Part shown: piece after piece, positions 43,800 through 48,366 of the stretch
Layout of the letters: the number at the start of each line of letters is the position of its first letter
Position numbering within the stretch: position 1 is the stretch's first letter
Source of the DNA: Dimorphilus gyrociliatus
Lineage: Eukaryota > Animalia > Annelida
Reading direction: 5' to 3'
Length of the DNA: 64,000 nt
Assembly: GCA_904063045.1 (NCBI GenBank)
Contig: CAJFCJ010000009.1
Coordinates: 228,942 to 292,941, forward strand
Position numbers and translations under genes: made by a program
The notes under the pieces: model-generated
Told to the model about the DNA's origin: nothing
The model's database searches: none
The model's input: the letters and a program-made list of their open reading frames with translations, nothing else

Positions 43800-45433
43800 A
43801 CAGTAAATAGACGATTTTAATAGTTTACAAATTTACTATAAATACATTGATTTAAGGAATGATATTTCTTGATTGAATGAAATATCATATACGTTTATTT
43901 TGTGTTTTTGTACAAATTGTATCTTTATTTTATGTTCATTCATGTTCACAGAATTGAAAAAAAAATTTCTTACCCAATGACTCAGAGAGTTTACGGGTTT
44001 TTTTCTCTATCAGAATATACTGAAAAGGTTGTCGACGGTACTCCTTTCAACGTGGCAAATTATATAATACTGATTAATTGTCCCAGTAAAAATACCCTGC
44101 ATAGGTATGTTATTTCGGAAAAGAGAAAGAATACTAAGGTTTATGTATAATAGTCCTAATTTTAGAAAATATTGCTAAAGCGTTTTCTTTAAATTGTGGT
44201 CCTATGAATGATTGTGAACCTAGTGAAAAATGAACCCTATCAATGGCAATTAAGAGAATATCTTAGCAATTCTTTAGATAACTTTATATAGATTTCATTT
44301 TCGTTGCTGATTCGATCGACGTTGAAAGAAACATAAATTTCTGCAGAAGATGATAGAGAGATTAAAATTTTAGATTAATTAAAGATTTTTTTTTGTATTT
44401 TTGTTTAGATTATTAAAAATTGTCTTGAAAATAATTTAGACTGTCTATCTTGAAAAAAAAACAACCTTTATTGTTTAAAAATAAATGTACTACGAATCCA
44501 GTCTAATCCGTTAAGGAAATTGAATTGGCGCGAAAATAATAGTTTATGCAATATCTTCCAACGTGGTTCAATATTATATGTCGGTGTAGAAACGTGCAAG
44601 TCTAATGTTGTCCTTTTAACAAAAAAGTATAAGCTAATTGAAGAGTTCACTGTTTTATGAATCAGAAATTGAGTTCGACAGCTATATCATTATCATCTGA
44701 TTTTATCATCAATTTAATAGTGATAACTTGAAAAACACGTACATTTTGAAGCAAAATGCAATGATAGACTGTATTTCGCATTTTAATAATCTTTTCTCTG
44801 TTAAAGGAAAAGTTGTGCACTCTTCAAATTACATATTGAAGATGGTGCAAAGACGTTTAACATACACGTTTATTATTAATATTAACAAATTGTCAAATCA
44901 ATTTACACTACATATTATCATCCATCTATTAATCATCCGCAATTGAAATAAATAGAAGAAATGAACAGAATGGTATGTATTACATAGATTTAACATCAAA
45001 TTGTAAATTCTACATCGTATTTAGTCATTTATATTAAACTTGAAAACAAGTATACTAACTTTAATTTAAGTTTAAAGCATTAAAAAAAAATGACTGTAAA
45101 TTTATATCACAGTACTGTCCTACTTCTACAAAATTGAATGATTAGAAGGAATGTTAGATTCTTTTGTTGACTAGACTTTTTTTAACTGCTCTGCGGAGAG
45201 GAGGCAACTAATTTGAATAATATCTAGCCTAGAAATGATGATAATCATCAAATTTCTAATGAGAGAAGGCGGAAAAAGGAAAATGATACATTAACAAAAT
45301 GACCAGATTTATATCTTGCTTAAATCTAGAATTTAATCTTAAACTAATATATTATGTAGAAGATTTGACTTTTTTTTGAGACAAAATAGATTGGATTAAG
45401 TTATTTCACTCGGAATGAAAATAAGAAGATAAT

Positions 45434-47150
45434 TTATCTTAAGTCGGCGTCTCCTTCGATTCCTTTCTTAATCTTCAACAAAATTGCAGTATACCATTGA
45501 TCCAGACGAGAAATACTATCGTATTCCTTAACAGCATCCGCAAAATTATCGGGATTGCTATCTTCAATAGCTTCAATCAGTTTCTATTTGAAAAGATTTA
45601 TTAGTATAAATGTATACTTTAACATTTCTCAGTGAAAGTCCACTGATTTGTTTTTTAGCAATAGGGCGAAAATTAAAGATAAGCATAGATTATTAAGCAA
45701 ACCTTCAAAAGTTTAGCTTCCCTTTTGTCAGCGAATGATGGCATCATCTTTTCGTACTTTTCAAGAGCAGTATTTGCATCGGTAACATCTTTATCCATGG
45801 CTAATCTACATAGAGCTGCTTTGAATAAATGATCTGCTGCGCTGTATTTTAGAAGCTGATTTCCTAACACAGCTTGAGCAATCTAAAGAGGACGGCAATA
45901 GGAAAAAGAGAAATAGAGAAAGAAAATATTATAAAAGCCAAAATTATTAAATCTTTGTTAAAGGAAATATCGCAATTAGGATTTAAAGAAGCGCCAATTA
46001 TAGTTTGCGAAAGCTTTTACTATCTACCTTTATAAATTTAAACTCTTTTGTACTGGAAAGTATCAGATAGATCTTCTGATACTTTTCCATAGCTATTTCA
46101 GTATCAATATGATCTTGTATTAGCCTAATCAGTAACGCTCGAAAGAAATATTCTGGTGCTCCGTATGACGTTAATTTTGTGTTTAGACTTTTCTTTCCTA
46201 TCTTTTTATCACAAAATGTAGATAGGGAGAATTGTTTTCTTACATTAGAAATTATGAAAAAACTTACTGTTTCGTAAATGTCAATTGCCTTTTCGTATTG
46301 TTCCATTTGAGCGGCATATTGCGCAACCTTTAATAAGCATTTGTTGGCCGAACTGTTTGATTCTTCTCCTTTGTAATAGTCTGCAGCTTGTTCATAATGA
46401 GTAATTGCTTTTTCAATATCAATCATATCATTTTCAAAGATTTCAGCGATGGTTATGTGATGTTTAGCCGCGATAGTAAATTTACCCATATCAGTGTATA
46501 TTTCAATGGCTTTCGTTATACAAGAAACTGCCTCTATTGATGGAGAAGAATAGTAGGTAAAAGCTAAATATCGCTAAGTGTTACATTAAAACAATTAACT
46601 AACCATTAACGTCACACTTTTTGTAAGCGTTTCCAGCATCGACGTAGTGGGATGCTGCTTCGTGTTTACTATTCAATTTTAAGTAAATCTGAGCCGATTG
46701 AGAGAAGGCTTTTCCCGCTCCTAATGGAGTAAACGTTTAAAAAAATCTCTTCCAAAGTGTTAATATTTAATATTAAATTATTATTTACCATTCCAGTTTT
46801 TAGCCATTTTAAACGAGTTTGCAGCTCTATCATATAATTCAGCAGCTTCTTCGGACTTGGAAGAACCCCTTTGATTTATCGAAATAATTAACTTTTACTT
46901 TATTAAATAGAATAAAGTTATTGAATATCATATTTAGATTTATTTTACTGTAACTTTAAATTTATCTATATAAGTTTATTATAGTTAAAATAATTTTTTT
47001 TCATTTCATACTATATTCTAATCAATACACTAAGGATATTATAAATATCAAATGAGATATTTACCCAAACATCCCGAAAATACCTCCAGATTTCGTCTTC
47101 TTTTCGGCTTGCGCCATTAAATCTTGCGCCTTTTTCTCGTGATCACCCAT
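45434..47150 (-). CDS. NAPA: Alpha-soluble NSF attachment protein (alpha-SNAP) with a duplicated internal exon
   Basis: [62 protein letters not shown]-terminal DLR. Homologous exons at 46201-46028 and 45882-45703. Confidence 0.97.
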
Positions 47151-47895
47151 TTTCTTTCGCTGACTTTCCTCTTTCAATTCTTAAATGCAACAAATTTGGT
47201 ATATTGAGAAATATAATAACAATATTGCATACGCATGCGCGTCAAGTCATCCCTTTCCGCTTCCGAAGGAATATTTAAAATTCTATTGAAATTATTTAAG
47301 AATTAGAAATATATATGCCTAAAAAATTGACAACAAGAACTAAATAATAAATGCTTTATTCATATTTCTTTTCATTAATTAGAATAACGATTCTGTATCT
47401 GGAACAAATTTTATCTTGACTAAATAAGAGGGGAATTCATAACCCCTTTTCTAGTCTTTCAAAGCAAAAGCAAGAGAATATTCGAAAATGGCCGTCAATA
47501 ATAATTTTCTCACAGCTCCATTTGTTTACTAACTTTATTTAAATAGTAAGCAAATGCATTTTATTCAGTACTTTTCAAATAAAATAACATAAGCCTAAAT
47601 CAAGCTAAGTAGTAGATATAAAGATATTATAATGACTAATTGACACGCTGCACCCTAAAAACATCAACATAGGTGGAAAAATCGAATTTAACTTGAATGA
47701 AAATTGATATTTACCGTTTGTTTTCATTGAAAAATATCGTGTATAAAAGGTTTCTCCGTAAATTTCTATTGAGGTAATAAAAGCATTTGTTGTCAATTCG
47801 ATTCGTTTTTTCATTCAACAATCATCAATAGAGGAGAAATTTGTTTGACTTTTCTTTTAAAAGAAATTATTAAAAAATTTATTCAAGTTACACGA

Positions 47896-48366
47896 ATGTT
47901 CTTTTTTAAACGAAAATCAGAAAAGAAGTTGATTAATGAAGAAAATCCAGGAACAATTATTAATTCTGAATGTTTAATAGTAGAATTAAAACGATCTATT
48001 AAAGATTTGAATAAGAAAGATATGGGAGAAAGAAAAATGAATGGTATTGGATTTAGCAAAGATAATGCTCTATTAGCGACAGGATTATCTATAGAATATG
48101 AAATACCCCCTAAAGAGAGGATGGAATTAGAAGAATACACCGCAGAGACAAGCCCAAAAGAGCATTTAAGAATATTATCTTTATTTAGACAATTATTGGT
48201 GTTTGAAGAAAACCCGGCGAAACTTCCTCAACTATTAAAATCATGCATTCTTCGAGTGATTGAAGAAAGATCGAAAAAGGAGAAATTTAGCTATCGATTA
48301 AATAAAACAGTTGCAAATTTAAAGAAAATATCGCCATCTTGTAAAATAACACCTTTAAATTATTAA
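47896..48366 (+). CDS. Hypothetical protein (about 156 aa)
   Basis: Single 471-bp ORF with charged, helical composition; no recognised family. Confidence 0.55.
   Translation: MFFFKRKSEKKLINEENPGTIINSECLIVELKRSIKDLNKKDMGERKMNGIGFSKDNALLATGLSIEYEIPPKERMELEEYTAETSPKEHLRILSLFRQLLVFEENPAKLPQLLKSCILRVIEERSKKEKFSYRLNKTVANLKKISPSCKITPLNY

What the first reader, a model, noticed from the sequence alone, without database searches (positions are those of the whole stretch)
45703..46201. Alpha-SNAP carries a duplicated, highly divergent alternative exon
Seen: exon X 46201-46028 (174 nt; [58 protein letters not shown]) and exon Y 45882-45703 (180 nt; [60 protein letters not shown]) both align to the same segment (human ..LLKYSAKDYFFKAALC..KYEELFPAFSDSRECKLMK). 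Both are phase 0-0 and open. X has a weaker AAG acceptor, and its upstream 66-nt intron is itself stop-free. Established: alpha-SNAP is usually a highly conserved single-copy SNARE/NSF adaptor, diversified in vertebrates by gene duplication (beta-SNAP). Inference: isoform diversification by mutually exclusive splicing, giving a more basic, fast-evolving SNAP variant (for example germline or neural). Exclusivity is not frame-enforced.
Basis: partly seen in the sequence, partly recalled or inferred. Interest (0 to 1): 0.8.

Follow-up and report, generated by a model that had tools for sequence, protein, structure and literature searches.

The report
Second, divergent alpha-SNAP exon, expressed
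The single alpha-SNAP gene seen here in the tiny marine worm Dimorphilus gyrociliatus holds two copies of one 58-codon exon; the odd copy is kept by selection and appears in RNA, so the gene probably makes a second form of this membrane-fusion recycling protein, though I could not see whether the two exons are used one at a time.

Summary
On the minus strand, exon X (46201-46028) and exon Y (45882-45703) are both open and phase 0-0. Both align to alpha-SNAP residues 188-245, and they are 33% identical to each other.

X is not a dead copy.
- Only its coding frame is open (0.5% of shuffles are).
- It keeps the family's hydrophobic/polar pattern at 43 of 46 columns.
- Against the closest relative's exon, its non-synonymous difference (0.29) is far below the saturated synonymous difference (0.75).

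In one spliced RNA assembly, a 175-nt contig (depth 83) lies exactly on X with no intron sequence. The main contig (depth 314) joins exon 4 directly to Y. X is therefore a real minority exon, but its splice partners were not seen, so mutual exclusivity is unproven. Nothing in the reading frame or intron length enforces it.

X breaks 8 of 17 near-invariant family columns, including the P-x-F-x-D turn; Y breaks 1. Capitella has a single copy of this exon. No X-type sequence turned up in 1.8 billion representative proteins or in the JGI metagenomes. No paper in the searchable library describes an alpha-SNAP exon duplication.

The scan has many notes on other tandem alternative exons in this genome, but none on this one. 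This is a new member of a known kind, of moderate interest.

The parts
47065..47150 (-). alpha-SNAP exon 1, from the ATG at 47150
   Evidence: Sequence. Joint 47064|46868 region, 196 nt skipped with GT..AG, in two RNA runs.
46789..46868 (-). exon 2. Its acceptor is caaag|G, an AAG acceptor like X's.
46604..46720 (-). exon 3
46268..46533 (-). exon 4, constant. It is 80-85% identical to animal alpha/beta-SNAPs. Donor ACA|gtaagt.
46202..46267 (-). 66-nt intron before X. It is stop-free and in frame (22 codons). It holds CTATCTAC (46225-46218), which can pair with X's donor.
   Evidence: No RNA contig lies on it.
46028..46201 (-). exon X: 174 nt, 58 codons, phase 0-0. The divergent alternative copy.
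   Evidence: A 175-nt RNA contig at depth 82.8 lies exactly on 46028-46201.
45883..46027 (-). 145-nt intron between X and Y. It starts gtagat.
   Evidence: No RNA contig lies on it.
45703..45882 (-). exon Y: 180 nt, 60 codons, phase 0-0. The canonical copy, used in the main transcript.
   Evidence: The joint 45882|46268 appears in both RNA runs.
45434..45583 (-). last coding exon, including the stop codon

Best explanation
A tandem duplication of the 58-codon exon produced two copies. This exon encodes the end of helix 9, helices 10 and 11, the P-x-F-x-D turn and the start of helix 12 of alpha-SNAP.

Y stayed canonical and is spliced into the main mRNA. X is a functional, selected exon spliced into a minority of mRNAs, roughly a fifth to a quarter in whole-animal RNA.

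The most likely outcome is that X replaces Y in at least part of these mRNAs. That gives a 290-residue alpha-SNAP whose N-terminal SNARE-binding sheet and C-terminal NSF-activating tail are unchanged, while the first half of the C-terminal helical bundle is swapped.

The swapped piece carries three contact residues known from the 20S complex:
- D217 (NSF N-domain contact) is kept in both exons.
- R239 (SNARE contact) is K in X and R in Y.
- K203 (SNARE contact) is lost in both: P in X, A in Y.

X also replaces the near-invariant P-x-F-x-D-S-R turn with L-I-L-S-S-T-K. The X form should therefore fold like alpha-SNAP but present a different surface where the SNAP, the NSF N-domain and the membrane-distal end of the SNARE bundle meet. 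This is diversification by splicing of the kind vertebrates reached by gene duplication.

Shown: homology, intactness, selection, presence in RNA with exact exon ends, and minority use. Inferred: the X-only (exclusive) mRNA, the fold and the functional consequence.
For: Homology of X and Y to the same alpha-SNAP segment.

X is intact and selected:
- Open frame against 0.5% of shuffles.
- 43 of 46 hydrophobic/polar columns kept, against a shuffle mean of 23 +/- 3.4.
- Against the closest relative's exon (P0072, transcript L003), pN is 0.29 and pS 0.75 (saturated), the same pN as Y.

X is in RNA:
- The contig lies exactly on 46028-46201 at depth 82.8. Depth is zero on both flanking introns, and the contig's one extra 3' letter did not align to the intron's first base (g in gene sense).
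- The main spliced contig (depth 314.3) joins exon 4 to Y.
- Only the minus-strand orientation gives AG/GT at the contig's ends.

Structure and contacts:
- Helix map from an AlphaFold2 model of P0072, pLDDT 91.
- With a family alignment, X is modelled as the same helices at pLDDT 65-88.
- Contact residues K203, D217 and R239 come from the review PMC11532144, which cites Zhao et al. 2015, mapped through the alignments.
Against: - No read or contig showing the X-to-last-exon joint, or any X joint, was seen. Only assembled contigs of two runs were available.
- Exclusivity is not enforced. All four combinations stay in frame, and the 145-nt X-Y intron is not too short to splice.
- X breaks 8 of 17 near-invariant columns, so the X form could be impaired rather than specialised.
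- No X-type exon was found in any other organism, so there is no comparative proof of function beyond the pairwise pN/pS.
- The structure is driven by the family alignment. It is a fragment that reads through the intron.
Confidence: 0.6

Rival explanations
1. X is a cassette exon that is added in front of Y rather than swapped for it. The product would be about 350 residues, with helices 10-11 and the turn repeated in tandem.
For: - Inclusion of both exons stays in frame.
- The X contig is 175 nt: X plus one letter that is not the intron's g. Y and the last exon both begin with A and differ at the second letter. A 31-mer graph would break exactly there if both X-Y and X-last-exon joints exist, so part of the X mRNAs may carry Y.
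- The genome's own alpha-SNAP protein did not appear among proteins of 92-294 residues. That would fit an annotated model longer than 292 residues.
Against: - No X-Y joint was seen.
- A tandem repeat of half of the C-terminal bundle is hard to fit into the compact alpha-SNAP fold (inference).
- The same one-letter argument also calls for an X-to-last-exon joint.
- The absence of the genome's own protein from the database has other possible causes.
Confidence: 0.25
2. X is a decaying pseudo-exon that the spliceosome still picks up as noise. X-containing mRNAs would have no function.
For: - X breaks 8 of 17 near-invariant family columns and has a very long branch (1.41) in the exon tree.
- Its GC content (0.31) lies between that of introns and the other exons.
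- No orthologue was found elsewhere.
Against: - With synonymous sites saturated, a neutral copy should have pN close to pS, plus stops and indels. X has pN 0.29 against pS 0.75, no stop, no indel and the ancestral length of 58 codons, as in Capitella and mammals.
- It keeps the helix core pattern.
- A depth of 83 against 314 is high for splicing noise.
Confidence: 0.08
3. X is used mainly together with the retained, in-frame 66-nt intron. This extends exon 4 by 22 + 58 codons, i.e. an alternative 5' splice-site choice rather than a separate exon.
For: - The intron is stop-free and a multiple of three.
- The X contig starts exactly at X's first base. In a 31-mer graph this implies at least two different upstream contexts (inference).
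- In the fragment model the 22 residues are drawn as a continuation of helix 9.
Against: - No contig lies on the intron in either run: depth is zero between 46202 and 46267.
- About one in five to six AT-rich introns of this length would be open in frame by chance (my estimate from the stop frequency behind).
Confidence: 0.07

Closest known systems
Tandem-duplicated, mutually exclusive alternative exons in animal genes
   Same: There are two adjacent homologous exons of nearly equal length and the same phase. One is canonical and one divergent, both are intact, and the region swapped is a discrete structural unit.
   Different: Exclusive use is not demonstrated here, and neither frame nor intron length enforces it. 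The two copies are unusually far apart (33% protein identity, nucleotide identity at saturation). The gene concerned, alpha-SNAP, has no such exon pair described in the papers I could search.
Alpha/beta-SNAP (NAPA/NAPB) paralogues of vertebrates
   Same: Both give more than one SNAP adaptor for NSF from an alpha-SNAP ancestor.
   Different: The vertebrate forms are whole-gene duplicates that keep all family-invariant residues of this segment; all SNAP segments compared break at most 2 of 17. Here only 58 residues differ, and X breaks 8 of 17.
Alpha-SNAP of the closest relative found (P0072, transcript L003 from run SRR31837527, organism not known to me)
   Same: It is 74-82% identical to the constant exons here. 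Its single exon shares derived residues with both copies: I1 and R26 with both, and RLIQD, YGA, EIA and KYQ-I with X.
   Different: Its transcript shows one canonical exon that breaks none of the invariants. Whether its genome holds a second copy is unknown.

Membership tests
alpha-SNAP / SNAP family (Pfam PF14938) | The gene as a whole is an alpha-SNAP orthologue | tested here: met
   Exon 4 is 80-85% identical to named alpha/beta-SNAPs carrying PF14938. The other exons are 46-84% identical. The CDS without X is 292 codons with no internal stop.
alpha-SNAP / SNAP family (Pfam PF14938) | The exon aligns to alpha-SNAP residues 188-245 | tested here: met
   X: E 1.2e-5, ungapped over 1-58. Y: E 6.5e-12.
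alpha-SNAP / SNAP family (Pfam PF14938) | Near-invariant residues of this segment (17 columns at 90% or more in 29 non-redundant animal SNAPs) | tested here: not met
   X breaks 8 (L11T, K16P, C25I, P46L, F48L, D50S, R52K, L56F). Y breaks 1 (K16A). All the others break at most 2. This is not met for X and met for Y.
alpha-SNAP / SNAP family (Pfam PF14938) | Helical core pattern of the segment | tested here: met
   X keeps 21 of 23 hydrophobic and 22 of 23 polar columns; no shuffle out of 20000 reached this.
Mutually exclusive tandem exons | Adjacent exons homologous to each other, with the same phase and similar length | tested here: met
   174 and 180 nt, both phase 0-0, 145 nt apart.
Mutually exclusive tandem exons | Each exon is spliced into mature RNA | tested here: met
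   Y: the joints 46268|45882 and 45703|45583. X: a contig exactly on the exon with no intron on either side. The evidence for X is indirect because no joint was seen.
Mutually exclusive tandem exons | Transcripts carry exactly one of the two exons | tested here: inconclusive
   Y-only mRNA is shown. X-only and X+Y mRNAs are neither shown nor excluded.
Mutually exclusive tandem exons | A mechanism that enforces exclusivity (frame/NMD, intron too short, competing RNA pairings) | tested here: inconclusive
   Frame: not enforcing. Intron of 145 nt: not limiting. An 8-bp stem joins the intron before X to X's donor and appears in both the MFE and the centroid fold, but the z-score is only -1.83 and there is no comparative support.
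Pseudo-exon (dead duplicate) | Stops, frameshifts, neutral substitution pattern, no expression | tested here: not met
   None of these was found.

The most novel reading that the evidence does not exclude
Dimorphilus makes, from one gene, a second alpha-SNAP in which the first half of the C-terminal bundle is exchanged for a version lacking the otherwise near-invariant P-x-F-x-D-S-R turn. This X form would be a functionally distinct NSF adaptor: altered coupling to NSF or to particular SNARE complexes, or a regulatory competitor of the canonical form. It would be an invertebrate, splicing-based counterpart of SNAP paralogue diversification.
Probability: 0.4. Interest if true: 0.55.

Novelty: new member of a known kind. 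Interest (0 to 1): 0.4.

Why it matters
Alpha-SNAP is one of the most conserved parts of the membrane-fusion machinery, and its known diversification is by gene duplication. A natural isoform that swaps only helices 10-12 would be a ready-made variant for asking what this part of the C-terminal bundle contributes to 20S assembly and SNARE disassembly. That region contains one NSF-contact and two SNARE-contact residues plus an invariant turn.

The finding also adds to the picture that this compact genome, which has lost many genes, keeps many tandem alternative exons. The scan holds many notes of that kind on this genome.

Tried and rejected
- **Word searches with X.** Neither X alone (candidates of 32-101 aa) nor X within the stop-free read-through of exon 4 + intron + X (92-294 aa) found anything.
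- **phmmer of X against 1.84 billion representatives.** It gave 15 hits at E <= 0.001. All are canonical SNAPs at 34-45% identity, apart from one spurious repeat protein (P0001). None is X-type.
- **JGI metagenome scans.** The scan with X found nothing. The scan with an exon alignment gave 74 canonical loci. None is X-type and none has a tandem copy. The three loci with two hits (L073, L075, L076) are one exon split by an intron.
- **Capitella genomic locus.** One copy only.
- **Tree of the 58 columns.** X groups with P0072 (94/86), but the AU test does not reject X+Y as sisters (p 0.20). The age of the duplication stays open.
- **Literature.** Three searches for an alpha-SNAP/NAPA exon duplication or mutually exclusive exons found nothing relevant. 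The one candidate paper concerns other genes. The run accession of the relative is in no paper.
- **Frameshift idea, rejected.** I considered that X's odd C-terminal 14 residues come from a frameshift. The other frames are full of stops, and the last 9 residues are conservative replacements of the canonical ones.
- **Joined isoforms.** In one search the exons were concatenated inside a script only to count length and stops. Nothing was saved or sent.

Full report
**What is there.** The minus strand between 47150 and 45434 carries an alpha-SNAP gene. Its exons are exon 1 (47150-47065), exon 2 (46868-46789), exon 3 (46720-46604), exon 4 (46533-46268), X (46201-46028), Y (45882-45703) and the last exon (45583-45434, stop included).
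- Without X the coding sequence is 292 codons with no internal stop.
- Exon 4 is 80-85% identical to named alpha- and beta-SNAPs.
I did not test this myself.
- The genome paper reports a median intron of 66 bp (PMC7854359). That matches the 66-70-nt introns here.

**The observation.**
- Both match the same stretch of solved alpha-SNAP structures. X matches ungapped over all 58 residues (E 1.2e-5). Y matches with a two-residue insertion (E 6.5e-12).
- They are 33% identical to each other (E 3e-11) and 49% identical as DNA, which is at saturation.
- Both are phase 0-0.
- The intron before X is stop-free and in frame.
- X's AAG acceptor is not unusual in this gene, because constitutive intron 1 also ends in AAG.

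**Is X alive?** Four independent lines say yes.
- X is open only in its coding frame. The other two frames hold 9 and 4 stops, and only 0.5% of shuffles of its letters are open.
- It has the ancestral length of 58 codons, the same as the single exon of Capitella teleta (L001 10640-10813) and of mammals.
- At 46 columns where 29 non-redundant animal SNAPs are consistently hydrophobic or consistently polar, X agrees at 43. Shuffles average 23 +/- 3.4, and none of 20000 reached 43.
- Against the exon of the closest relative found (P0072, transcript L003), X differs at 29% of non-synonymous sites and 75% of synonymous sites, which is saturated. Y gives 29% and 63%, and constant exon 4 gives 10% and 80%. 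A neutral copy of that age would not keep pN so far below pS.

**Is X in RNA?** Two runs hold the locus, and both were available only as assembled contigs.
- In run X2 a 3941-nt spliced contig (depth 314.3) carries all constant exons and joins exon 4 directly to Y (joint 45882|46268).
- The coral metatranscriptome X1 shows the same joint at low depth.
- In X2 a separate 175-nt contig (depth 82.8) lies on 46028-46201, that is, exactly on X. Depth is zero on both flanking introns. The contig's one extra letter lies beyond X's 3' end and did not align to the intron's first base.
- Only the minus-strand orientation puts AG and GT at the contig's ends.
- DNA contamination or unspliced RNA would have run into the introns. 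X is therefore spliced at the predicted sites, at roughly a quarter of the main contig's depth. Contig depths are only rough guides.

**What X is joined to.** This was not seen. The following is inference from how 31-mer assembly graphs break, which I know from my own knowledge and did not test.
- A contig that stops exactly at an exon end implies at least two different continuations there.
- Y and the last exon both start with A and differ at the second letter. That would give exactly X plus one letter, as observed.
- This fits a mixture of X-Y and X-last-exon joints.
- The start of the contig at X's first base likewise implies two upstream contexts, for example exon 4 and something else.
- Mutual exclusivity therefore remains open. 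Nothing enforces it: every combination is in frame, and the 145-nt intron is long enough to splice.
- An 8-bp stem can form between CUAUCUAC in the intron before X (46225-46218) and X's donor GUAGAUAG (46027-46020). It appears in both the MFE and centroid folds and would loop X out. Its z-score is only -1.83 and there is no comparative support. It is a lead only.

**How odd is X?** Among 17 columns conserved at 90% or more, X breaks 8, Y breaks 1 and all other SNAPs break at most 2.
- Five of X's breaks lie in the last 14 residues. There the near-invariant P-x-F-x-D-S-R-E turn reads L-I-L-S-S-T-K-E.
- The final residues are conservative replacements (T/S, K/R, F/Y, F/L, I/L).
- X is slightly more basic than Y (+4 against +2), which is within the family range.

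**Where it sits in the protein.** An AlphaFold2 model of P0072 (pLDDT 91.4) places the exon at residues 185-242. This covers the end of helix 175-190, a loop, helices 196-213 and 215-228, the short P-S-F-A-D helix 230-234 and the start of helix 236-249.
- A review citing Zhao et al. 2015 lists D217 among the residues that contact the NSF N-domain, and K203 and R239 among those that contact the SNARE bundle (PMC11532144).
- Mapped through the alignments, all three lie in this exon:
  - D217 is kept in X and Y.
  - R239 is K in X and R in Y.
  - K203 is P in X and A in Y, but K in P0072 and Capitella.
- A fragment model of exon 4 + retained intron + X, made with a family alignment, draws X as the same helices at pLDDT 65-88. 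The alignment drives this result, so it shows compatibility only.

**Age and spread.**
- Capitella has one copy.
- None of 74 eukaryotic loci from metagenomes has a tandem copy or an X-type exon.
- The word searches, the scan of 1.84 billion representatives and a metagenome scan with X found no X-type sequence. One caveat applies: isoforms can hide inside 50% clusters, and unannotated exons are not proteins.
- P0072 is the closest relative in every constant exon (74-82% identical). Its single exon is 50% identical to X and 58% to Y. It shares I1 and R26 with both copies, and RLIQD, YGA, EIA and KYQ-I with X only.
- In a tree of the 58 columns X groups with P0072 (94/86), but an AU test does not reject X+Y as sisters (p 0.20). 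The duplication arose within the Dimorphilus lineage or somewhat earlier, and I cannot say which.

**Comparison with what is known.** Tandem exon duplication with alternative use is a well-known kind, and this scan holds many notes of such pairs in this genome. I found no paper describing one in alpha-SNAP. This is a new member of a known kind.

Noticed in passing
window 45581-45603 with 45945-45967, and 45610-45624 with 45956-45970: Imperfect complementary stretches (23 nt at 74% and 15 nt at 80%) lie in the intron before Y and at the acceptor of the last exon, so they could loop Y out. Together with the stem around X this would make two competing loops. The sequence is AT-rich, so chance is a likely explanation.
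   Followed up: no
window 45300-47300 and beyond (run X2, record 6): The spliced 3941-nt RNA contig runs about 0.9 kb past the 3' end and about 1.9 kb past the 5' end of the alpha-SNAP gene. It may merge with transcripts of the neighbouring genes, including a plus-strand gene that seems to start near 47897.
   Followed up: no
(protein database): No protein 100% identical to exon 4 appeared among candidates of 92-294 residues, although the Y isoform is 292 residues. The deposited gene model may be longer, for example with both X and Y, or it may be missing.
   Followed up: no
L073 913-1252; L076 4001-4792: In these metagenome contigs of unknown eukaryotes the homologous exon is split by an extra intron near residue 35. 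Its first half begins IGKNSLENTLLKYGAKDYFF, so the IGK and YGA features of X also occur in other lineages.
   Followed up: partly
window 45703-45882 (Y) and 46028-46201 (X): Both copies have lost the lysine equivalent to K203 of mammalian alpha-SNAP, a reported SNARE contact. The closest relative and Capitella keep it.
   Followed up: partly
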